From sequence record OQ363659.1: DNA of 64,000 nucleotides, one strand, 5' to 3'. Shown here piece after piece: positions 570 to 62,135 of the stretch. The notes under the pieces are model-generated. The model was not told the DNA's origin. It saw only the letters and a list, made by a program, of their open reading frames with translations, and did no database searches. How positions within the stretch are numbered: the first letter of the stretch is position 1; the number at the start of each line of letters is the position of its first letter. A program made the translations under genes and the position numbers.

Positions 570-772
570 TTAAGTGGTGATACACTGAACTGGTTCATGA
601 GCCACAGAGCACACCAGCTACCGAACAGTGCCAGCGGAACGGTATACCACCAGTCCAAGATTGCTTTAGCTTTCTTCCGATCTTGTTGAAGCAGGGATAC
701 AAGTGTGATACCAACAGTCCAGATTGCACCAAGTGCAGTTAGAACAATGGCTGCCTCTTGTACGACAGACAT
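554..772 (-). CDS. Small two-TM membrane protein
   Basis: Two hydrophobic segments; start moved to MSVV after GGAGGT RBS. Confidence 0.7.
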   Translation of the reverse strand: MSVVQEAAIVLTALGAIWTVGITLVSLLQQDRKKAKAILDWWYTVPLALFGSWCALWLMNQFSVSPLKWIWQ

Positions 773-818
773 ACTACCTCCAAACATAATGCTTCCCCGA
801 AGGGAAGCACTTATGACG

Positions 819-2219
819 TTAAACAGCTACAGGGGCTTCGATAGCTGGATCAGGATCGTAACCGATTACTTCCAGGTCACGCCAGGTCAGATCGAGCACC
901 GGAGTACCAATCGGGCAATTGATCTTGAGACGTGGCATCTCTTTGGATTTGCGCGTCAGTTGCAATGCGACTTGCTCACGATGGTTGTCGTAGATGTGTG
1001 CATCACCTACAACGTGAATCAGTTCTTCACCATAGTAGTTCAGCTCATGAGCGATCTTGTGCGTCAGAGACGAATAGAACGTCAGGTTGTACGGTGCACC
1101 GAGGAACGCGTCATTACTACGCATGTACACCAGGCACTTCAATGCACGACGTGGGATTTGTCGTTCATCGAGATATGCATGGATTAGTTCATCGTCTTGT
1201 GAAACTTGGTCGTTCTTCTGGCGGGAGAATGCTTCCATCGGCAATGGCTCAGGGACAGAGAACTCGATTATCTTGTCATCTTCCCGATTAGCCAAAGCTT
1301 TAACATGTTCGTTTCGTGCACGACGATAACGAGTCTGCATGATCGACCAGCGTTCCAACATGTCAAGATCACGCACCCAGAACTGGATGAATGAATGGCA
1401 TGGTGGCAAAGCTTGCTCGTCGAGATAAGCTGGGTTCCATGGACACAGAATGTGACGACGGGAATCTGGGTTTTCACGCAGTCCTTTCATCAGATCTTTA
1501 AACTGATCGATCACGCGATGGTACAACAAACCACCACGAGCAAGTTCATCTATCAGAGCAAACCCGCGTTTCTCCAATGCTGGCGCTTCAACGCCATCAT
1601 CTTTACAAACACGGTAGTCATCGATTGCACGGAACATCTTACCGTAGACTGCACCGAGTTCACCTTCAACTACGGTTTCCGTAGGGATACCAATCAACGT
1701 GTAGAACTTACGCATCAGTTCATCACGGTCTGCCTGTGTTAGCATCTGCCCATGATCTTCGATGCAGATATAATGCAAGTGTGTGTACTCACGTCCGGTA
1801 TACTGGCGTTCATAAACGTTGAAACCATCGCCACGGTGAATAGGTCCTTCCCCAGACAATGCCCCATGGCCGATCATCGGTTCATCCCAGCCGAAATGCG
1901 ACCGCTTATAACTACGTTCCATTTCTTTCAGGGTAGCCGGACGATAAACACCGGTGCCTTTCTTGACCCACTCGTCCCAGATGTTACAGTTGTTCTCTTT
2001 CAAGAACTTGACGTTGGTATCACCCGACAACATCCAGTCTTCTTCAACGAAGCCAGTCTTCAGGTGTAGCTTTTTGGTTTGAACAGCAGCGAGGCGATTG
2101 TCGCTGATATTGTAACGACGAACTACGCCAAACGTCGAAGTGGTACCAGTGCCAGTACGGTCACCTTTAGGAACACCGCCTTTCAGGATCTCTTCGAGGT
2201 AAGAATGATATTGTTGCAT
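819..2219 (-). CDS. thyA: Thymidylate synthase with two large insertions (466 aa)
   Basis: Motifs DRTGTGT, WDEW, ALPPCH (catalytic Cys), YMRSNDAFLGAPYN, GDAHIYDNH. Confidence 0.95.
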   Translation of the reverse strand: MQQYHSYLEEILKGGVPKGDRTGTGTTSTFGVVRRYNISDNRLAAVQTKKLHLKTGFVEEDWMLSGDTNVKFLKENNCNIWDEWVKKGTGVYRPATLKEMERSYKRSHFGWDEPMIGHGALSGEGPIHRGDGFNVYERQYTGREYTHLHYICIEDHGQMLTQADRDELMRKFYTLIGIPTETVVEGELGAVYGKMFRAIDDYRVCKDDGVEAPALEKRGFALIDELARGGLLYHRVIDQFKDLMKGLRENPDSRRHILCPWNPAYLDEQALPPCHSFIQFWVRDLDMLERWSIMQTRYRRARNEHVKALANREDDKIIEFSVPEPLPMEAFSRQKNDQVSQDDELIHAYLDERQIPRRALKCLVYMRSNDAFLGAPYNLTFYSSLTHKIAHELNYYGEELIHVVGDAHIYDNHREQVALQLTRKSKEMPRLKINCPIGTPVLDLTWRDLEVIGYDPDPAIEAPVAV

Positions 2220-2245
2220 TGAAGCTTTCCTCTTTTAATAACACA

Positions 2246-2833
2246 CTATTGCCACAGTGCGTCATTTTTCCAGGTTTCATGTCCCACGTTGTACATCACA
2301 CACAGATCACGGTTGTGATGTAAGATCAATGCTGGCCATTCTTTATTCTCACGCAGATGCCGTTGGAGCTGAACCAGCGTGTAGTCGTAGATATCCAGTT
2401 CACAGCTCAACCGAAGACCCGCATTGTAATTAGGTACTCGATAAACCCCTTTAGCCAGTTCTTGGTATTCTGGGGGATCGATGCGTTCTTTGGTTAGCGT
2501 GAGTCGAACTTTTTCGAATTCAACCAGCGTCAGATTCTGAACGCGGTATTCGCCAGTTTCCGAATTGAATTGAATGGTGGAAATCAATTCATCGAATGGT
2601 AACTGCTTACGGTAGACGTTAATGTGCTTACGTTCACCATAACTGTTAAACTGTATTTGGAAACCACCTTTAGGCATCGCACCTTCGACAGTCAGCAGGT
2701 GTCCACCAACGAAGTCAATGCCCTGACCTACGAGATTCTGGTCTACGCCACTACCATCACCGAAATGAACATCGACATCGAATTCAACTCGGTTACCTTC
2801 CACAGCTGATTTGCAATCTTCACAGCAACCCAT
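2246..2833 (-). CDS. Hypothetical protein, Cys-rich N-terminus (MGCCEDC)
   Basis: ORF track; lies between terminator and thyA. Confidence 0.75.
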   Translation of the reverse strand: MGCCEDCKSAVEGNRVEFDVDVHFGDGSGVDQNLVGQGIDFVGGHLLTVEGAMPKGGFQIQFNSYGERKHINVYRKQLPFDELISTIQFNSETGEYRVQNLTLVEFEKVRLTLTKERIDPPEYQELAKGVYRVPNYNAGLRLSCELDIYDYTLVQLQRHLRENKEWPALILHHNRDLCVMYNVGHETWKNDALWQ

Positions 2834-2870
2834 TTACAGCTCCTAACGACATAAAAGAAAAAGGAAGGTT

Positions 2871-2888
2871 GGGGACCCGAAGGTCCCC
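2871..2888 (-). terminator. Intrinsic terminator after the Nampt-like gene
   Basis: GGGGACC-TTCG-GGTCCCC followed by CTTCCTTTTTCTTTT on minus strand. Confidence 0.85.
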
Positions 2889-2894
2889 TCCCAA

Positions 2895-4718
2895 TTAAGC
2901 TTCGACCACCAGCTCTTCCAGATCGAATTCTTCCATCTCATCAGCAATGGATTCTTCGATGTAGTTGCGCATGGTTGCCAGGTCAGTGGTACGAACGAAC
3001 TTACCACCCATCCACAGAGGACGGAGTTCACCCGAACCAGTAGCCAGAGACTTCCAATCCAACGATACCGACTGGATCAGCTTGAAGTCGAAGTTGTCTT
3101 CGTCTACACGCAGGAAGCCACGAGCCGATTTCTTCGATGCAGCAGTCTTCGGATCTTTGTACAGCTCGATCAGACGTTCACGCACTTCACATGCGGTGGC
3201 TTTCATAGCCATACCGAAGGTGTCACGAGTGTTGTACTGATAGGTGTACGAACCGATACCCAACACGACGTTCGACGAAGCGAAGCCTTTGTCAGCCAGA
3301 CGCTGGAAGATCTGTTCAGTACGTTCTACAGTGATCGAGTCACCATAGATCAGGCCGATGTATTCGTTCAGGACTTTGTAGCCCTTGCCGTTTACGTGGC
3401 CACCGAAGGTTTCCCACAGCGACTCGATCGCACCGATGGCTTCAGCACGAGTCATCTCACGACCGATGTAGTCTTCGATAGACCCGGTAGTAGACAACTG
3501 GTTTTGCAGTTCGTAGTACTTGTCGCCGATACGAATTGCTTCGCCTTCAACTGCACACCAGCCGATAGCCATCAGGGCTTCTTGGAAGTCATTCATCGAA
3601 CCGTATTCGACCAGCTTGAAGCCAGTGATAACCTTGACAGGATCACCGGAGTCAGGACGCACTACGACTTTGGCCAGGCCCAGAGCGTTCTTCTTACGTG
3701 CTTCGATCTCCACACGCAGAGTCGGCAGGACGTTGGCGATAACACCCCAGAAGTCGAACGAGTCGCAGACCAGCGAGACAATACCTTCGCCGACTTTGTC
3801 ACGAATGATTTCGAGGATGAACTCGCGCTCACATTCCAGCTTCAGCTTGTCGATGGTTGCCACGTAAACTTCGTGTGGCATTTCCAGCAGGTCCATACCA
3901 ACCGCTTGCAGTTTCTCTTCCAGACGGGAGAGAATGTTGGCAGTGGCTACGGCGTGCTCGGTAGCAGTAACCGATGCACCTACCAGTTCCTTATCAGAAT
4001 CGGCACCGTAAAGAGCTTCCAGGTAGTCGATCGAAGGAATGGTGTCAGTACCAGCGAACGACAGCAGGTGACCGCCGTTAGAACGACCAGCCGCTTCTGG
4101 GCCAGGCATACCACGGAACGAGAAGTCATGACCTTGGAACAGGATGTGGTCACGGTTATCACAGGTCTTGGCTGCCCAACGTTCCATCACCCGACGATAT
4201 TCGTAGGCGATAGTGGCGTTGGTGATTTGCTGCCAGTTGTACGACGACAGGATGGTTTCCAGGTAGTTAACCAACCAGTAGTGTTCTTTGTGCTCTTCTT
4301 CGTTGTAGATAACCCACAGCGGGATGCCGATGTTGACGCGCTTGCCTTCTTCCATAGCCAGCACGGTTACAGGCAGGTAGCCAACGTCGTGCAGCTTGGC
4401 GATTTGCTTGACTGAGATCACGTCTACACCACAAGCGTTATCGAAACGACGCTTAGCGAACTTGATGGCTTTCTCTTTTTCTACCTGGAAGAAAGTACGA
4501 TCCCACAGCTCCACCAGTTCTTGCCAGGTGCCGTAGATACCGAAGTTCACGACTTTGTTATCGTAGTACGACGATGCCGACTTCGAGTGCAGGAAGTTCT
4601 TGGCGGAGCGCGGGGTGAAGTTGGAATACTTACGGGTAGTTCCTTCCGGGTACAGAGGACCGTGCCCTGGTTTGTAGAAATCGGTACCGGTTACAGCTTG
4701 CAGCCACAATGCAGACAT
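2895..4718 (-). CDS. nadV: Nicotinamide phosphoribosyltransferase family protein (probable NARP1 Namat)
   Basis: TDFYK, FHDFSFRG-like (GHDFSFRG), ATEH, SLVCDSFD, VVRPDSGDP, IGLIYGDSIT, LGIGSYTYQYNTRDTFGMAMKAT, KDPKT..KKSARG; directly downstream of a Prs-like gene. Confidence 0.92.
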   Translation of the reverse strand: MSALWLQAVTGTDFYKPGHGPLYPEGTTRKYSNFTPRSAKNFLHSKSASSYYDNKVVNFGIYGTWQELVELWDRTFFQVEKEKAIKFAKRRFDNACGVDVISVKQIAKLHDVGYLPVTVLAMEEGKRVNIGIPLWVIYNEEEHKEHYWLVNYLETILSSYNWQQITNATIAYEYRRVMERWAAKTCDNRDHILFQGHDFSFRGMPGPEAAGRSNGGHLLSFAGTDTIPSIDYLEALYGADSDKELVGASVTATEHAVATANILSRLEEKLQAVGMDLLEMPHEVYVATIDKLKLECEREFILEIIRDKVGEGIVSLVCDSFDFWGVIANVLPTLRVEIEARKKNALGLAKVVVRPDSGDPVKVITGFKLVEYGSMNDFQEALMAIGWCAVEGEAIRIGDKYYELQNQLSTTGSIEDYIGREMTRAEAIGAIESLWETFGGHVNGKGYKVLNEYIGLIYGDSITVERTEQIFQRLADKGFASSNVVLGIGSYTYQYNTRDTFGMAMKATACEVRERLIELYKDPKTAASKKSARGFLRVDEDNFDFKLIQSVSLDWKSLATGSGELRPLWMGGKFVRTTDLATMRNYIEESIADEMEEFDLEELVVEA

Positions 4719-4727
4719 GGTGATTCC

Positions 4728-5669
4728 TTACAGGTGCTTGAATGCGATCAGGTTTACTGGATTGTTTTCACGTTCTGGCAAATCAACGTGATAGGTGTTC
4801 ATGGTGTAGACTTTGTCGAAGACGTCGGTCAACACGTTGACACCAGCCGAGAAGATACCGTGCGTAACGTACAGAGACAGAATCCCTAGATCGTAAGGCT
4901 TCAGTACTTTGGCGAGTTCAGTGAAGGTACGGCCACCGTCACAGATATCGTCGACAACCAGCAGATGCTGATCTTTGAGGTCTTCGAGATCCATGACTTC
5001 ATCACCACAGACATAGCTGTCCACGGTAGTGCGCAGGATCTTGCCATCACGAGTATTGCGCACCTTGTTAGCGTACACGATACCTTTAAAGCCGAACTCC
5101 TTGGCCAGCGATTCGACTTTCTTACGGGCACCAGCATCCGGTGCCACCAAAACGGTATTGGCCGGGATGATACGTTCGTCAGACGAGTAGTCCAGCATGT
5201 ACTTGCGGAACAGATCGTTCAGCGAGAAGATGCGAGCGTTGTTCACAACAGAACCCATCACATCAGAGTGTGGGTCAGTCAGTACAACACGTTCGACGTT
5301 CAGGCTGTTGATGACGTGAGCGAATGCTTTCGCCGAGTTTGCTTCGCCTGGATTACACACACGGTCTTGACGAGCGTATGGCATGTAACCGATGTCCAGG
5401 GTGATCTGCGGGTTAGCAACCACCGCGTTCTCACGGATAGCGTTCACCGCCATGATCAACGACCATGCAGCTGCCGCATCAGGCAACGCCGCTACGATGC
5501 GGTAGGTTTCACCTTTATGCCACACGCCTGGTTGTGCACCATCATCACGAGGAATCGATACGTTCACTTCACCAGCAGGGAACATCCGACCGTCACGGAT
5601 TTCCGTTGGACGGGTCCACGAAGCACCCAGACCTTCTTGTGTGACGATCAACTTCAGATTGGGAGTCAT
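4728..5669 (-). CDS. prs: Ribose-phosphate pyrophosphokinase family protein (probable NARP1 Adps)
   Basis: FPAGEV, YMPYARQDR, DPHS, VAPDAGA, PRPP-binding loop LLVVDDICDGGRTF, YVTHGIFS. Confidence 0.9.
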   Translation of the reverse strand: MTPNLKLIVTQEGLGASWTRPTEIRDGRMFPAGEVNVSIPRDDGAQPGVWHKGETYRIVAALPDAAAAWSLIMAVNAIRENAVVANPQITLDIGYMPYARQDRVCNPGEANSAKAFAHVINSLNVERVVLTDPHSDVMGSVVNNARIFSLNDLFRKYMLDYSSDERIIPANTVLVAPDAGARKKVESLAKEFGFKGIVYANKVRNTRDGKILRTTVDSYVCGDEVMDLEDLKDQHLLVVDDICDGGRTFTELAKVLKPYDLGILSLYVTHGIFSAGVNVLTDVFDKVYTMNTYHVDLPERENNPVNLIAFKHL

Positions 5670-6010
5670 GCAGCTTCCTTTTGTTCAATTGCAAAGTCAG
5701 CATCGAAGAGCAGCTCAACATCACCGAGCTTGGTCTTGATGTTACGGTCAGCTTCATAACGGCAGGTTACCAGATCCATCACCAGATCAGCTTCTTGATC
5801 GCCGCAGCGAACCAAGAACCGAGCAACCTTGCCGAGTTCAACACCACGAGCGATTACGTCAACTTCGTTCGTGAGAATGTTTTCACCATGATAAGCCCCG
5901 ACGAACTTAACCATCGTCACCTGCGCTCCTTCATTAACGAAGAAGCGATCTTTGTGGTAGGTCATTTCATCAGGCAGTACGCGGAACAGGTGGTGCAGTT
6001 TGGTTTCCAT
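5666..6010 (-). CDS. Hypothetical protein (114 aa)
   Basis: ORF track; 4-bp overlap with the prs-like start (translational coupling). Confidence 0.75.
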   Translation of the reverse strand: METKLHHLFRVLPDEMTYHKDRFFVNEGAQVTMVKFVGAYHGENILTNEVDVIARGVELGKVARFLVRCGDQEADLVMDLVTCRYEADRNIKTKLGDVELLFDADFAIEQKEAA

Positions 6011-6020
6011 GCTATCCTCT

Positions 6021-7403
6021 TTATACAGCTGGTTCTCCTACGGCTTCAATAGCTTGCGGTGCACGAGGGGCACCAGCAGGCTTCTTAGCAACAGGAAGTT
6101 CTTGACGCATCGCGTAGTTCTCAGCGATGTACGATTCCGTGATATTTCCCAAGCGATCGACGAAGGCTTGGTGATCGAATGGATGTTCATTGAAAAGGCC
6201 GGACAGTACAGCAGCAGCCGTGTCTTGGAACATTAGATTACGATCGTAAGTAGGATTATCATACATCACATCGATGTAGCGTTTAACCTCAGCATCTTTG
6301 AGGAACGGAACATGGATCTTTTTGTCCACACGGGAAGGACGATATACAGCAGGGTCGATCTTCTCGATATGGTTGGTGGTCATCACGATAATGATGTCTT
6401 CGAGTTCTACCACGCCTTGCAGGATGTTCAGGAACGTGGACAGCTGGATATCACAGTCCATGAAAGCGATCTCTTTAGCCAGATCGTTCTCACCGAGTTC
6501 CAGACGCTTCTCGGCGTCCTTAGCATTGACGCGTTTGTGCAGGGTCTTGACATCGTCGAAGTCTTCGATGCAGAGCATGTCACCAGGCGAGAGCTGGGAG
6601 ATCAGTTTCTGCAACGCACGACCATCGGTAGCCAGGTTGATGAAGTGCAGATCACGTTTGAAACGACGAGCCGCAGCTTTAATCAACGAGGTCTTACCCG
6701 TACCCGGAGGACCTTCGAGAATCACAGTGTGTTTGTAAGCACGCCCACGCTTACGATACCACGCTTCATTATTGATGAACTTTTCAATCGAACCGAAGAA
6801 CTCTTCTTCTACGGTAGGATCGATCACCAACATTTCACCGTGGTTCAACTTAAGCTTACCAGTAATGCTCCAACGACCTTCCTCAGGAGCATAGATCCGA
6901 ACAGAGTTCTTGTCCTTCTTAATACGGAACTCTTCCACCAACCGTTCGAATGGTGCAGTAGAGCGACCGAATGTATAAAGGGTGAACTCTTCCTTTTCAA
7001 TATCCGTACCCGATGAATTTAGGCGTTGAACATTGAACCAGAAATAGCGCCCTTCAAAGAAGAACCAGTGGAACCCAGAACCAGGACCAAACGCAGGTGC
7101 TTCACGATCGAACGTAACACGGCGATTACGATCATACTTGGCCCACTTGGTGCGGGCAAACCACTTCATGAACTCGGCGTAGTTCATCAGGTCCATCGAG
7201 TACGACCCAGCACGGGTAAACGTCATCGAGGAAATGATGTTACGACGAATGGCATTCCAGATCGTGTTAGGGATAGTTCTACCGAACCAACCCAGTACAC
7301 CCATCAGACCCAAGGTCATGAAACCCTTTACCGTGGAATCCCCCGCACTCAACATTTCAAGTGTCTTGTGGAAGAACTCCAATACTTCATTGATGATCAT
7401 CAA
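6021..7403 (-). CDS. BCS1-like membrane-anchored AAA+ ATPase
   Basis: N-terminal hydrophobic anchor; WYRKRGRAYK upstream of Walker A GPPGTGKT; Walker B CIEDFD; LSTFLNILQG; MTTNH; IDPAVYRPSRVD, matching the BCS1 family layout. Confidence 0.8.
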   Translation of the reverse strand: MMIINEVLEFFHKTLEMLSAGDSTVKGFMTLGLMGVLGWFGRTIPNTIWNAIRRNIISSMTFTRAGSYSMDLMNYAEFMKWFARTKWAKYDRNRRVTFDREAPAFGPGSGFHWFFFEGRYFWFNVQRLNSSGTDIEKEEFTLYTFGRSTAPFERLVEEFRIKKDKNSVRIYAPEEGRWSITGKLKLNHGEMLVIDPTVEEEFFGSIEKFINNEAWYRKRGRAYKHTVILEGPPGTGKTSLIKAAARRFKRDLHFINLATDGRALQKLISQLSPGDMLCIEDFDDVKTLHKRVNAKDAEKRLELGENDLAKEIAFMDCDIQLSTFLNILQGVVELEDIIIVMTTNHIEKIDPAVYRPSRVDKKIHVPFLKDAEVKRYIDVMYDNPTYDRNLMFQDTAAAVLSGLFNEHPFDHQAFVDRLGNITESYIAENYAMRQELPVAKKPAGAPRAPQAIEAVGEPAV

Positions 7404-8074
7404 TTCAATCCCGGTTGGATGGTGACGACAGAATCCCAGTTTTCACCGGCAGCCTGTACATATTCGTAGAATGCATCAATTGCTTCAGGAGAAGGGATGT
7501 AGTTCACCCCTTCTTTGGTTGGTACCAGCTTCTGGTCAGTGAGTGTCCAGCGGAACTCTTCGTTGTCATACATCAGAGCGAACACGTCATAACGGACGTT
7601 CAACACAACCGTTACTTCGAGCAGGTTAGTGAAGCCAACCTTGTTCGTGTTAACGCCGACCACAGTTGCATCAACGTACGGCTGGAGTTGTTCGTAGCTG
7701 TACGCACCAGCGAGTTTGGAAAGGCGGAGACCCCAATCCATCACTTGATCCATCAACCCACGTTCGACCATGTCCACGAATGGCACCATGTCGTTACCAA
7801 CTTGCTCCATGTTCGGAGCATGCGTGTATTGACGAGTGCTGACGTCCATGTGGTACAGATGGCCGTTGTTCTGGCGATGTACCGGCAGGAAGTTGAAGAC
7901 GATCCGATGGAGCTCTTCCGAGTGCACCAGAGTTTCCTCAGGGCACCAGATCAAGTCCTTATAGAACCTGTCGTTGAGAGCATAAAGATCCACGGGTGTG
8001 AACCGTGGAGTCTTTGTCATGAAATCAAATGCCGCTGTCTTACGTACAGCAGGAACTAGACGATCCAGGTTCAC
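7400..8074 (-). CDS. Hypothetical protein (224 aa)
   Basis: ORF track; 4-bp overlaps on both sides. Confidence 0.8.
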   Translation of the reverse strand: MNLDRLVPAVRKTAAFDFMTKTPRFTPVDLYALNDRFYKDLIWCPEETLVHSEELHRIVFNFLPVHRQNNGHLYHMDVSTRQYTHAPNMEQVGNDMVPFVDMVERGLMDQVMDWGLRLSKLAGAYSYEQLQPYVDATVVGVNTNKVGFTNLLEVTVVLNVRYDVFALMYDNEEFRWTLTDQKLVPTKEGVNYIPSPEAIDAFYEYVQAAGENWDSVVTIQPGLN

Positions 8075-8778
8075 GCTTTACCCCCTTGGATAACACGCAG
8101 GTGTGGCGGACATACACGACGTTGACGTGGAGCAGGCAGCGAGAAGCCACCAACGTTGCCGAAGTCCAGGAGTGGTTTGGGTTGTTCTTTTGGTGCAGGT
8201 GCAGCAGGACGTTGTGCCAGAGGCTTGCGCTTCATCAGCTCTTGAACGGTGGGCAGTTGATTGCCATCTTCATCGTGCGTCAGAGGTTCCACGCCATGTA
8301 CAGCGTAAGCACCATCTGGCAATGGTTGCATACCAGACTCTTCACCTTCCATGAGGCCCTGAGGACCTTGGATACCGCTTTGGGTCATAAAGTCTTGCAG
8401 TTCTTCACGGAGCTGGATGCCCAGCAGTTCACGTTCGATGTTCGGGATAGGTAGGAAGCTTTGGGTCGACTCGGAAGTCGGAGCGATGAAGCCCAGTACA
8501 GCAGCGTACGGAACTTCTACGAAAACGTCTTGGCGATTGTAGCCACAATTGAAGCTGAAGGTTTCTTCATTGTAGCTGAAATTCTTGGTTGCGTTTGCAG
8601 CGATGTTCAGCTTGATCTGATACAGACCGTTTACTTCGGGTTCCATGATACCAACATCAAACATGCGGGCATCAGCGACCAGCAGGATACGACGTGGCAT
8701 ATCCATGTCGATGAACCACTGGATCATGGTGTTCATTACAGCGCGGGTCATGTTCAGCTCAGGTGCGGCTTGTTGCAT
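8071..8778 (-). CDS. sspB: SspB-like ClpXP adaptor protein
   Basis: IKLNIAANATKNF..FSFNCGY..VEVPYAAVLG resembles SspB core (IVLNIAPRAV..FNARF..VPLAAVLA); disordered linker; C-terminal HLRVI resembles the SspB ClpX-binding tail LRVV. Confidence 0.8.
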   Translation of the reverse strand: MQQAAPELNMTRAVMNTMIQWFIDMDMPRRILLVADARMFDVGIMEPEVNGLYQIKLNIAANATKNFSYNEETFSFNCGYNRQDVFVEVPYAAVLGFIAPTSESTQSFLPIPNIERELLGIQLREELQDFMTQSGIQGPQGLMEGEESGMQPLPDGAYAVHGVEPLTHDEDGNQLPTVQELMKRKPLAQRPAAPAPKEQPKPLLDFGNVGGFSLPAPRQRRVCPPHLRVIQGGKA

Positions 8779-8814
8779 CGTCTTACTCCAATTTTAGTGT
8801 TGTAATTCAAAGTA

Positions 8815-8840
8815 GTTATATAGATTTCAAACTTTTTGGA
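8815..8840 (-). promoter_or_regulatory. phiKZ-type early promoter
   Basis: Minus strand CAAAAAGTTTGAAATCTATATAAC; recurring intergenic motif resembling the phiKZ TATATTAC early motif. Confidence 0.75.
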
Positions 8841-8846
8841 CTGCGC

Positions 8847-9068
8847 TTAGCACCAGTAGGCTAAGGTCAAGGCTTTGACAATCGCAGCTCCAATAGCCAA
8901 CAACAAAAAGCCACCCCCTGCAAGAAAGATCTTGGTATAGATCCGGCAGATAAGATGATAGCGAGGTTGGAACACATGGCTGATAAGTTCGTTACCGATA
9001 GCAAGCAATCCACCCACCACTAACAACAAGAAGCCAATGCACAGCAGAACGAATCCGATATAGAGCAT
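8847..9068 (-). CDS. Small two-TM membrane protein
   Basis: Two strongly hydrophobic segments. Confidence 0.75.
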   Translation of the reverse strand: MLYIGFVLLCIGFLLLVVGGLLAIGNELISHVFQPRYHLICRIYTKIFLAGGGFLLLAIGAAIVKALTLAYWC

Positions 9069-61856: not shown

Positions 61857-62135
61857 TCATGCCGCTCGGAGGATGTCGTGTGACGCATCCTCGATTACAT
61901 CATGTACAATGTCGCAGCCGTAGTTATTCAGGGTAGTGGAACCCTTACGGCTACGGACATCGTAGCTAATAACCTTACGCCCTTTAGACACTACAACGAA
62001 GATACCGGTAGCAGGATCGTACGACACGCTATTCAATCCACGCTCAATGGTAAAACCGTTTGCTGCTTCTGGTTTTGCGATCAATGCATGGATCATATCT
62101 GCTACACGTGCAAAGTTACCCATTTCAAACTCCAT
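61857..62135 (-). CDS. Hypothetical early protein (92 aa)
   Basis: Single-gene cassette between an early promoter and a terminator. Confidence 0.75.
   Translation of the reverse strand: MEFEMGNFARVADMIHALIAKPEAANGFTIERGLNSVSYDPATGIFVVVSKGRKVISYDVRSRKGSTTLNNYGCDIVHDVIEDASHDILRAA

What the first reader, a model, noticed from the sequence alone, without database searches (positions are those of the whole stretch)
2895..5669. Prs-like + Nampt-like gene pair: probable NARP1 NAD+-reconstitution anti-defence pathway
Seen: adjacent co-oriented prs-family and nampt-family genes, prs first, 9 bp apart. Established: the phage NARP1 pathway uses a Prs homolog (Adps, ADPR to ADPR-PP) and a Nampt homolog (Namat, ADPR-PP + nicotinamide to NAD+) to counter NAD-depleting defences such as Thoeris, DSR and SIR2-type systems. 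No NMN adenylyltransferase, which the classical or NARP2 route needs, is visible in this window. Inference: these act on ADPR rather than R5P/PRPP.
Basis: partly seen in the sequence, partly recalled or inferred. Interest (0 to 1): 0.65.

Follow-up and report, generated by a model that had tools for sequence, protein, structure and literature searches.

The report
Phage D6 NARP1 NAD-rebuilding gene pair
The two adjacent genes are the Adps and Namat enzymes of the known phage NARP1 pathway, which rebuilds NAD+ from ADP-ribose and nicotinamide to defeat NAD-depleting bacterial defences. This exact pair in Pseudomonas jumbo phage D6 is already listed in the paper that discovered the pathway, so it is correct but not new.

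Summary
The window is Pseudomonas syringae jumbo phage D6 (OQ363659.1, record 62001-126000).

Both proteins fall inside strongly supported phage clades:
- The Prs-like clade has support 98/92 and the Nampt-like clade 100/100.
- Each clade holds every experimentally validated Adps or Namat that I sampled (Bas63, SPbetaL1, FADO, DyoEdafos, ICP1).
- Both clades are separate from cellular Prs, bacterial NadV and NARP2-type Nampt.

The defining residues are present:
- Adps has the catalytic Lys202, the PP loop DDICDGGRTF, the Phe249 lid, and no C-terminal alpha11-alpha12 module.
- Namat has the His255/Arg354/Asp356 core and the aromatic selectivity-clamp helix Tyr491/Tyr493/Tyr495.

An AlphaFold model (pLDDT 93.9) best matches the Namat crystal structure 9W5X. 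No NMN adenylyltransferase, Nudix, PnuC or RyR gene occurs anywhere in the 307-kb genome.

Osterman et al. 2024 already list both D6 genes in Supplementary Tables 1 and 2 as an Adps homologue with Namat nearby and as "Adps-associated". The only open item is a conserved 114-aa ORF of unknown function that overlaps the adps start by 4 bp (ATGA).

The parts
4728..5669 (-). adps: ADP-ribose pyrophosphokinase (Prs-like, 313 aa), first NARP1 enzyme (ADPR + ATP -> ADPR-PP + AMP)
   Evidence: ORF. PHROG 619 at 4e-72. It fails every curated NCBIfam Prs cut-off (best 97 bits against 113). It sits in the phage Adps clade, support 98/92. Residues Phe30, Arg100, His134, Asp178, Lys202, Asp240/241, PP loop DDICDGGRTF and Phe249 are present, and there is no alpha11-alpha12 tail. 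It is listed as OQ363659_00129 in Osterman et al. Table S1.
4719..4727 (-). 9-nt spacer between the adps stop (TAA, 4730-4728) and the namat ATG (4718-4716). An AGGA Shine-Dalgarno-like motif spans the stop codon and the spacer.
   Evidence: Sequence read directly...CTG TAA GGA ATC ACC ATG...
2895..4718 (-). namat: nicotinamide ADP-ribose transferase (Nampt-like, 607 aa), second NARP1 enzyme (ADPR-PP + nicotinamide -> NAD+ + PPi)
   Evidence: PHROG 448 at 1e-168. phmmer gives 353 bits to SPbetaL1 Namat 9W5X/9W5W against about 135 bits to mammalian Nampt. It sits in the Adps-linked clade, support 100/100. His255, Arg354, Asp356 and the clamp helix GIGSYTYQYNTRD are present. The AlphaFold model has pLDDT 93.9 and its top Foldseek hit is 9W5X with TM 0.94-0.95. 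It is listed as OQ363659_00128, 'Adps-associated'.
2853..2888 (-). Terminator-like hairpin GGGGACC-UUCG-GGUCCCC followed by a U-rich tract, starting 7 nt after the namat stop codon. It is the probable 3' end of the transcription unit.
   Evidence: Sequence read. The fold gives -18.9 kcal/mol, z = -1.96 against shuffles. The consensus scan missed it because the U run begins more than 2 nt after the stem.
5666..6010 (-). 114-aa ORF of unknown function whose TGA stop overlaps the adps ATG (ATGA), preceded by AAGGAA. It may be translationally coupled to adps. Whether it belongs to the pathway is not shown.
   Evidence: Overlap read. The same overlap and position occur in Psa21, RVTF4 and three IMG/VR contigs, at 60-88% identity. 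No Pfam, PHROG, NCBIfam or Atlas match. It is unrelated to RyDEP. The AlphaFold model is unusable, pLDDT 47.5.

Best explanation
The pair is a NARP1 operon of jumbo phage D6. NAD-depleting defences such as Thoeris, DSR, SIR2-HerA and SEFIR cleave NAD+ to ADP-ribose and nicotinamide. [quoted passage not shown] Namat (607 aa) couples ADPR-PP to nicotinamide through a Nampt-like catalytic core, and an aromatic clamp selects the adenine-bearing substrate, regenerating NAD+. The two genes appear to be co-transcribed, probably together with the upstream 114-aa ORF, and a hairpin with a U tract follows namat. Family membership, the catalytic and specificity residues, the gene order and the lack of an NMNAT are shown here. 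The substrates, the products and the anti-defence effect in Pseudomonas are inferred from characterised homologues.
For: (1) The window is phage D6 at 100% identity.
(2) In the Adps tree, D6 lies in a 15-member phage clade (98/92) with the validated Adps of Bas63, SPbetaL1, FADO and DyoEdafos and the structural reference from ICP1. The 16 housekeeping Prs and 3 Prs paralogues lie outside it.
(3) All 19 residues named in the Adps structure paper (PMC13586617) match my ICP1 sequence. Most of the named ADPR- and ATP-contacting residues map to the same residue in D6: Phe30, Arg100, His134, Asp178, Lys202, Ile211, Asp240, Asp241, Ile242, Cys243, Asp244 and Phe249. The exceptions sit at positions that also vary among other Adps. 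The PP loop is identical to that of Bas63, and the Prs alpha11-alpha12 tail is absent.
(4) The protein fails all NCBIfam Prs cut-offs.
(5) In the Namat tree, the Adps-linked clade has support 100/100. The NARP2 Nampts (KVP40 and 3 others) and 20 bacterial NadV lie outside it.
(6) The clamp-helix positions are Tyr/Tyr/Tyr in D6. The first two positions are aromatic in 15/15 Adps-linked proteins, against Gly/Ala/Glu and Leu in 24/24 Nampt/NadV. The third is aromatic or His in 11/15, and mostly Gln, Lys or Arg (twice His) in Nampt/NadV. Among 73 IMG/VR relatives the aromatic counts are 72/73, 73/73 and 54/73.
(7) By sequence the protein scores 353 bits to Namat 9W5X against about 135 bits to Nampt. 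By structure the TM-score is 0.94-0.95 against 0.88-0.90.
(8) No PF01467, Nudix or PnuC is found in the genome, and KVP40 served as a positive control for the PF01467 search.
(9) Osterman et al. 2024 list both genes.
Against: No biochemical or genetic data exist for D6 or for any Psa21-like or phiKZ-like phage. Substrate choice between Namat and Nampt is a matter of degree: SPbetaL1 Namat still makes NMN from PRPP in vitro (PMC12774641), and KVP40 Nampt can use ADPR-PP. Closeness to Namat is not fully diagnostic either. Haemophilus ducreyi NadV, used as an NMN-forming enzyme, scores 313 bits against D6, although it has Gln and Arg at two of the three clamp positions (alignment). ICP1 Adps Phe92, which contacts the ADPR adenine, is Cys105 in D6, and this position is also variable in other Adps, including Bas63. 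The clamp-loop residue Arg40 of SPbetaL1 is Lys40 in D6, in a longer loop.
Confidence: 0.9

Rival explanations
1. Classical salvage. The genes encode an ordinary PRPP synthetase and a nicotinamide phosphoribosyltransferase that make PRPP and NMN, and a host NMN adenylyltransferase (NadD or NadR type) completes NAD+ synthesis.
For: This is the GenBank annotation. The Nampt-like protein just passes the NCBIfam NF006629 cut-off (432 against 405 bits). Namat enzymes keep some PRPP-dependent NMN synthesis. H. ducreyi NadV, an NMN producer, is a fairly close relative.
Against: The Prs-like protein fails every curated Prs model. It lies in the Adps clade away from all 19 cellular Prs. It has the remodelled donor PP loop and lacks the regulatory C-terminus. 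The Nampt-like protein carries the full aromatic clamp that NadV and Nampt lack. In Bas63, NARP1 worked in a host lacking pncC and nadR.
Confidence: 0.04
2. The chemistry is NARP1, but its main role in D6 is housekeeping. It would keep NAD+ high for the phage's own large replication and repair programme, or recycle ADPR from other sources, rather than counter a specific defence.
For: The pair sits in a nucleotide and nucleic-acid metabolism neighbourhood, with thymidylate synthase 676 nt downstream and an RNA ligase about 4 kb downstream. RNA ligase genes lie next to NARP1 in phiHQ, phiPsa347 and ITTPL. No defence phenotype has been tested in Pseudomonas.
Against: Free ADPR and nicotinamide build up mainly after NADase attack. 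NARP1 deletion in Bas63 and FADO gave phenotypes only on defence-carrying hosts, as described. According to Osterman et al., the pathway is almost confined to phages.
Confidence: 0.06

Closest known systems
NARP1 of Escherichia phage JohannRWettstein (Bas63) gp79-gp80 (Osterman et al. 2024)
   Same: Same gene order (adps then namat). The Adps PP loop DDICDGGRTF is identical. The Tyr/Tyr/Tyr clamp helix is the same. Both have the long-form Namat with inserts at the same two sites (593 aa against 607 aa). The two phages belong to the same Gram-negative-phage part of both clades.
   Different: Identity is only about 38-41%. The D6 clamp loop is longer. D6 is a 307-kb jumbo phage of Pseudomonas and has an extra 114-aa ORF overlapping the adps start. 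D6 has not been tested experimentally.
NARP1 of Bacillus phage SPbetaL1 (Adps gp190, Namat gp191; Namat structures 9W5X/9W5W)
   Same: The catalytic Lys (K162 of SPbetaL1, Lys202 of D6), Arg306 (Arg354 of D6) and the catalytic His are conserved. The clamp helix is aromatic at positions 392/394/396. It is the best structural match to the D6 model, TM 0.94-0.95.
   Different: SPbetaL1 Namat is the short form (492 aa). D6 has about 32 and about 51 extra residues at two sites and 9 extra in the clamp loop. The SPbetaL1 PP loop reads DDLSSFGGTF rather than DDICDGGRTF.
Vibrio phage ICP1 Adps (UniProt F1D1Q1; structures in PMC13586617)
   Same: The ADPR-contacting and donor-site residues are conserved, with Lys185 of ICP1 matching Lys202 of D6. 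The Phe221 lid matches Phe249. The alpha11-alpha12 module is absent.
   Different: Phe92 is Cys105 and Phe223 is Glu251 in D6. D6 has a 9-residue insertion in the catalytic beta-hairpin region, shared with RVTF4.
NARP2 of Vibrio phage KVP40 (Nampt/NadV plus the bifunctional Nmnat NatV)
   Same: It has a Nampt-fold enzyme with the same catalytic core and the same overall purpose of rebuilding NAD+.
   Different: KVP40 Nampt lies in a separate clade and has Gly/Leu/Gln at the clamp positions. KVP40 has no Adps homologue but does have PF01467 genes, whereas D6 has an Adps and no PF01467 gene.
Cellular class I ribose-phosphate pyrophosphokinase (Prs/PRPS) and bacterial NadV
   Same: The folds and core catalytic motifs are shared.
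   Different: D6 Adps falls below all curated Prs cut-offs. It has Cys-Asp-Gly-Gly where Prs has Ile/Val-Asp-Thr-Gly/Ala, Phe249 where Prs has Leu/Met, and no C-terminal filament and regulation module. D6 Namat has the aromatic clamp and longer loops that are absent from 20 bacterial NadV.
Haemophilus ducreyi NadV (PDB 9KE8/9KEO)
   Same: By sequence and fold it is much nearer to D6 Namat (313 bits, TM 0.92-0.93) than mammalian Nampt is.
   Different: It is used as an NMN-forming Nampt. It has Gln and Arg at two of the three clamp positions. I did not check whether it has an Adps partner.

Membership tests
Adps (NARP1 step 1) | Falls in the phage Adps clade, separate from cellular Prs | tested here: met
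   IQ-TREE with LG+C20: a 15-member phage clade, support 98/92, holds the validated Adps of Bas63, SPbetaL1, FADO and DyoEdafos. All 19 bacterial Prs lie outside it.
Adps (NARP1 step 1) | Catalytic lysine on the beta-hairpin (ICP1 Lys185, SPbetaL1 Lys162) | tested here: met
   Lys202 aligns with both. The lysine is also present in Prs, so it shows catalytic competence, not specificity.
Adps (NARP1 step 1) | Remodelled donor-binding PP loop plus the Phe lid (ICP1 Cys215-Ser220, Phe221) | tested here: met
   D6 reads DDICDGGRTF (residues 240-249), identical to Bas63. Phe at the lid position occurs in 15/15 Adps, against Leu/Met in the 6 cellular Prs in the alignment. Prs has DTGGT here.
Adps (NARP1 step 1) | ADPR-contacting residues (ICP1 Phe18, Arg87, Phe92, His121, Asp161, Asp212, Asp213) | tested here: inconclusive
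   Six of seven are conserved. Phe92 is Cys105 in D6, and this position also varies in other Adps (Met in Bas63, a gap in SPbetaL1).
Adps (NARP1 step 1) | Loss of the Prs C-terminal alpha11-alpha12 module | tested here: met
   D6 ends about 20 residues after the last shared motif. The bacterial Prs continue with the conserved ...AEAIRRI..ES.S..F tail. The criterion comes from PMC13586617.
Adps (NARP1 step 1) | A Namat gene within ten genes | tested here: met
   It is immediately downstream, 9 nt away.
Adps (NARP1 step 1) | Converts ADPR + ATP to ADPR-PP | not testable with these tools
   This needs an enzyme assay.
Namat (NARP1 step 2) | Falls in the Adps-associated Namat clade, apart from Nampt/NadV | tested here: met
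   The clade of 15 has support 100/100 and holds the 4 validated Namat. The 4 NARP2 Nampt and 20 bacterial NadV lie outside it.
Namat (NARP1 step 2) | Nampt-like catalytic core (His, Arg306, Asp of the RPDSGD motif) | tested here: met
   His255, Arg354 and Asp356 are present, and these positions are invariant in 73/73 relatives.
Namat (NARP1 step 2) | Selectivity-clamp helix with extra aromatic residues (SPbetaL1 Phe392, Tyr396) | tested here: met
   D6 has Tyr491 and Tyr495, plus Tyr493. Nampt/NadV have Gly/Ala/Glu at the first position and mostly Gln, Lys or Arg at the third.
Namat (NARP1 step 2) | Selectivity-clamp loop that supplies an adenine-contacting residue (SPbetaL1 Arg40) | tested here: inconclusive
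   D6 has Lys40, the commonest residue among 73 relatives (32 Lys, 22 Arg). Its loop is 9 residues longer than in SPbetaL1. The authors describe this loop as non-conserved.
Namat (NARP1 step 2) | Prefers ADPR-PP over PRPP and forms NAD+ directly | not testable with these tools
   This needs a competition assay.
NARP2 | A KVP40-type Nampt plus an Nmnat gene in the same genome | tested here: not met
   D6 lies outside the NARP2 clade. No PF01467 or Nudix is found in six frames of the 307 kb, while the KVP40 control is positive for PF01467.
NARP3 | A NadR-like enzyme plus a PnuC-like transporter | tested here: not met
   No PF01467 and no PF04973 in the D6 record.
NARP1-AP (NARP1 with the Adpp phosphatase) | A Macro-domain gene within two genes of NARP1 | tested here: not met
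   The flanking ORFs have no Macro match even at E = 10. The only Macro gene lies about 135 kb away and is DarG-like.
NARP1 with RyDEP | A RyR/R12-domain (PF02026) gene in the locus | tested here: not met
   No PF02026 in the genome. The 114-aa ORF shows no similarity to DyoEdafos gp78 (hhalign probability 0.2%).

The most novel reading that the evidence does not exclude
The 114-aa ORF (5666-6010) is a lineage-specific third component of NARP1. Its stop overlaps the adps start (ATGA), and it keeps that position in D6, Psa21, RVTF4 and three IMG/VR jumbo-phage contigs. It could feed or protect the pathway, for example by converting a modified ADPR species or immune signal into ADPR, as Adpp and RyDEP do in other phages. 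It has no detectable similarity to either.
Probability: 0.1. Interest if true: 0.45.

Novelty: already known. Interest (0 to 1): 0.12.

Why it matters
The result confirms that a P. syringae jumbo phage, which has been discussed as a biocontrol candidate, carries a complete and intact-looking NARP1 counter-defence. That bears on predicting its host range against strains with Thoeris, DSR, SIR2-type or similar NAD-depleting systems. It adds nothing conceptually, because the pathway, its structures and this very instance are already published. The practical value is a corrected annotation: GenBank calls the genes 'ribose-phosphate pyrophosphokinase' and 'nicotinamide phosphoribosyltransferase'.

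Tried and rejected
- Promoter and terminator scan. The sigma-70 and terminator consensus scan of 700-9000 gave counts at the shuffle level (9 against 7.7, and 11 against 7.3) and was not used. The hairpin after namat was found by reading the sequence.
- Flanking ORFs (114 aa and 195 aa). Pfam (also at E = 10), PHROGs, NCBIfam and the ESM Atlas gave nothing usable.
- Structure of the 114-aa ORF. AlphaFold with 2 rows gave pLDDT 47.5, too poor for a fold search, so none was run. I dropped the rows and did not send them to any other restricted tool.
- Known NARP1 accessories in the locus. RyDEP is rejected. A Macro/Adpp gene in the locus is rejected.
- The two Namat inserts as foreign domains. 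They give no Pfam match of their own and are modelled as a helical hairpin and a small alpha/beta subdomain. Validated Bas63 Namat has inserts at the same two sites. Insert lengths range from 14 to 84 and from 14 to 98 residues across 73 relatives. The 607-aa length is therefore ordinary.
- Whole-genome search by 'own'. It was not available, so I used the D6 record through a locus handle instead.
- Not used because not needed: the large protein searches, the reads tools and complex prediction. The Namat paper reports that Adps and Namat form no stable complex.
Full report
**Identity of the window.** The 2,775-bp stretch is 100% identical to Pseudomonas phage D6. D6 (OQ363659.1) is a 307,402-bp jumbo phage of P. 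syringae pv. tomato DC3000. Window position 1 corresponds to record position 62001. The nearest relatives are the Psa21-like and phiKZ-like jumbo phages RVTF4, Psa21, phiHQ, PA1C and HPP-Temi. The D6 genome paper (PMC11139720) does not mention these genes.

**Observation.** Two co-oriented minus-strand ORFs fill the reported interval exactly:
- a 313-aa gene at 4728-5669;
- a 607-aa gene at 2895-4718.

The spacer between them is 9 nt and carries an AGGA motif that spans the stop codon and the spacer. Family scans give the following:
- the upstream gene matches Pribosyltran and PHROG 619, 'ribose-phosphate pyrophosphokinase' (4e-72);
- the downstream gene matches NAPRTase and PHROG 448, 'nicotinamide phosphoribosyl transferase' (1e-168).

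The pairing is systematic. All 15 named phages I fetched have the two genes adjacent or up to two genes apart. In IMG/VR, 75 of 77 loci that encode the nearest Namat homologues have an Adps-like gene within 1.5 kb.

**The Prs-like protein is an Adps.**
- It fails every curated NCBIfam model for ribose-phosphate diphosphokinase. The best is TIGR01251 at 97 bits against a cut-off of 113, and the equivalogs score 33-82 bits against cut-offs of 296-536.
- I built a maximum-likelihood tree with 15 phage proteins and 19 bacterial Prs. The Prs came from 16 genomes that also encode NadV. D6 falls in a phage clade supported at 98/92. That clade contains the experimentally validated Adps of Bas63, SPbetaL1, FADO and DyoEdafos, and that of ICP1.
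- The enzyme in the 2026 Adps structure paper (UniProt F1D1Q1) is the ICP1 protein. All 19 residues named in that paper match my ICP1 sequence.
- Mapped onto D6, the following are conserved: Phe30, Arg100, His134, Asp178, catalytic Lys202, Ile211, Asp240, Asp241 and the PP loop. The PP loop reads DDICDGGRTF, letter for letter as in Bas63.
- The lid residue Phe249 is Phe in all 15 Adps and Leu/Met in the cellular Prs aligned.
- The C-terminal alpha11-alpha12 module, whose loss that paper calls a signature of the family, is missing.
- One ADPR-contact residue (ICP1 Phe92) is Cys105 in D6, but this position also varies among other Adps.

**The Nampt-like protein is a Namat.**
- By sequence it scores 353 bits (3e-104) against SPbetaL1 Namat (9W5X/9W5W, identified from PMC12774641). 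It scores about 135-140 bits against mammalian and other Nampt.
- In a tree with 15 Adps-linked proteins, 4 NARP2-type phage Nampt (including KVP40) and 20 bacterial NadV, the Adps-linked group is a 100/100 clade on a long branch, and D6 lies inside it.
- The catalytic core is present: His255, Arg354 (SPbetaL1 Arg306) and Asp356.
- The selectivity-clamp helix reads GIGSYTYQYNTRD, with Tyr491, Tyr493 and Tyr495.
- The first two clamp positions are aromatic in 15/15 Adps-linked proteins, against Gly/Ala/Glu and Leu in 24/24 Nampt/NadV. The third is aromatic or His in 11/15, and mostly Gln, Lys or Arg (twice His) in Nampt/NadV.
- Among 73 IMG/VR relatives the aromatic counts are 72/73, 73/73 and 54/73.
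- The clamp loop is variable by definition. D6 has Lys40, the commonest residue there, in a loop 9 residues longer than in SPbetaL1.
- An AlphaFold2 model built on 73 sequences is confident (pLDDT 93.9, pTM 0.93). Its best PDB matches are the Namat chains (TM 0.94-0.95), followed by H. ducreyi NadV (0.92-0.93) and mammalian Nampt (0.88-0.90).

**Length of the protein.** D6 Namat is 607 aa against about 490 aa for SPbetaL1.
- The difference comes from two inserts, at about residues 262-302 and about 367-428.
- They are modelled as a helical hairpin and a small alpha/beta subdomain, and neither has a Pfam match of its own.
- Bas63 Namat, whose operon was validated in vivo, has inserts at the same sites.
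- Across relatives the two segments range from 14 to 84 and from 14 to 98 residues, and total lengths run from 483 to 625 aa.
- The long form is therefore a normal variant.

**Absence of the alternative routes.** Six-frame profile searches of the whole D6 record gave these results:
- no CTP_transf_like/NMNAT domain (PF01467);
- no Nudix;
- no PnuC;
- no RyR domain.

The same PF01467 search finds two loci in KVP40, and the NAPRTase profile finds exactly one locus in D6. RVTF4, Psa21 and phiHQ likewise lack PF01467. NARP2 and NARP3 are thus excluded. The known NARP1 accessories (Macro/Adpp, RyDEP) are also absent from the locus.

**Locus anatomy.**
- Upstream, a 114-aa ORF ends in a TGA that overlaps the adps ATG (ATGA) and is preceded by AAGGAA.
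- Downstream of namat lies a GGGGACC-UUCG-GGUCCCC hairpin with a U-rich tail (-18.9 kcal/mol). After it, a 195-aa ORFan and a long thymidylate synthase follow.
- The order AAA ATPase, 114-aa ORF, adps, namat, 195-aa ORF, thyA is conserved in D6 and Psa21. RVTF4 keeps it from the 114-aa ORF to thyA, where the fetched stretch begins, and the IMG/VR contig read keeps it from the AAA gene to namat.
- The 114-aa protein has relatives only in this phage group and no family match. Its predicted structure was too poor to use.

**Prior knowledge.** Osterman et al. 2024 (bioRxiv 10.1101/2024.02.11.579819) list both genes:
- OQ363659_00129, 'Pseudomonas phage D6', appears in Supplementary Table 1 (Adps homologues) with 'Namat within 10 genes: Yes';
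- OQ363659_00128 appears in Supplementary Table 2 as 'Adps-associated'.

Function in D6 itself has never been tested.

**Caveats.**
- Specificity in this family is a matter of degree. Namat makes NMN from PRPP in vitro, and KVP40 Nampt can use ADPR-PP.
- H. ducreyi NadV, used as an NMN producer, is closer to the Namat group than to classical Nampt. It lacks two of the three clamp aromatics.
- The assignment for D6 rests on several lines together: clade, clamp residues, an intact Adps partner and the absence of an NMNAT.

**Verdict.** This is a known kind and a known instance, so interest is low.

Noticed in passing
window 4728-5669 versus 2895-4718, compared with L123, L135, L122 and L139: Adps diverges much faster than its neighbour Namat. 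Against RVTF4 the identities are 38% (Adps) and 82% (Namat), against Psa21 46% and 72%, and against phiHQ 41% and 61%. Against the closest IMG/VR relative they are equal at 87% and 89%. In the trees the three phages still group together for both proteins, which points to rapid change rather than replacement of the gene. The cause is unknown.
   Followed up: partly
window 819-2219 (-): The thymidylate synthase is 466 aa, and its Pfam match is split into two stretches. Residues 2-284 cover only profile positions 1-156, which implies an in-frame insert of roughly 130 aa or more. The long form is conserved in Psa21 (473 aa), RVTF4 (474 aa) and phiHQ (476 aa). The nature of the insert was not examined.
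   Followed up: partly
window 6021-7403 (-): A BCS1-like AAA+ ATPase (BCS1_N plus AAA, PHROG 7485, unknown function) lies directly upstream of the 114-aa ORF. GenBank annotates it as 'cell division protein'. It holds the same position in Psa21 and in the IMG/VR relative read (L139), but phiHQ has an RNA ligase there instead.
   Followed up: partly
L003:1429-1956 (-) = D6 record about 202,789-203,316 (outside the window): This is the only Macro-domain protein of D6 (175 aa, PF01661 at 4e-10). It resembles DarG-type macrodomains (PDB 5M3I at 4e-26, 5M31, 7OMU) rather than the Poa1p-like Adpp phosphatase. It may be a counter to DarT DNA ADP-ribosylation.
   Followed up: partly
L001:6649-7953; L122:4633-5886; L124:1503-2408; L125:2099-3016: RNA ligase genes recur close to NARP1 in Pseudomonas phages. 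The ligase is immediately upstream in phiHQ, one gene away in ITTPL, three genes away in phiPsa347, and about 4 kb downstream in D6 and RVTF4. No functional link is known.
   Followed up: no
window 8071-8778 (-): A 235-aa ORF gives a weak SspB-like match (PF04386, 24.1 bits, below the 27-bit cut-off). It might be an adaptor-like protein.
   Followed up: no
window 2246-2833 (-): A 195-aa ORFan sits between the namat terminator hairpin and thyA. It is found only in Psa21 (62% identity) and RVTF4 (26% identity). It has no family match, and the Atlas model of it is poor (pLDDT 0.38).
   Followed up: partly
PDB 9KE8/9KEO versus window 2895-4718: Haemophilus ducreyi NadV, a classical NMN-forming enzyme, is much closer to phage Namat (313 bits, TM 0.92-0.93) than to mammalian or typical bacterial Nampt. 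It may descend from the Namat lineage with a degraded clamp (Gln and Arg at two of the clamp positions).
   Followed up: partly
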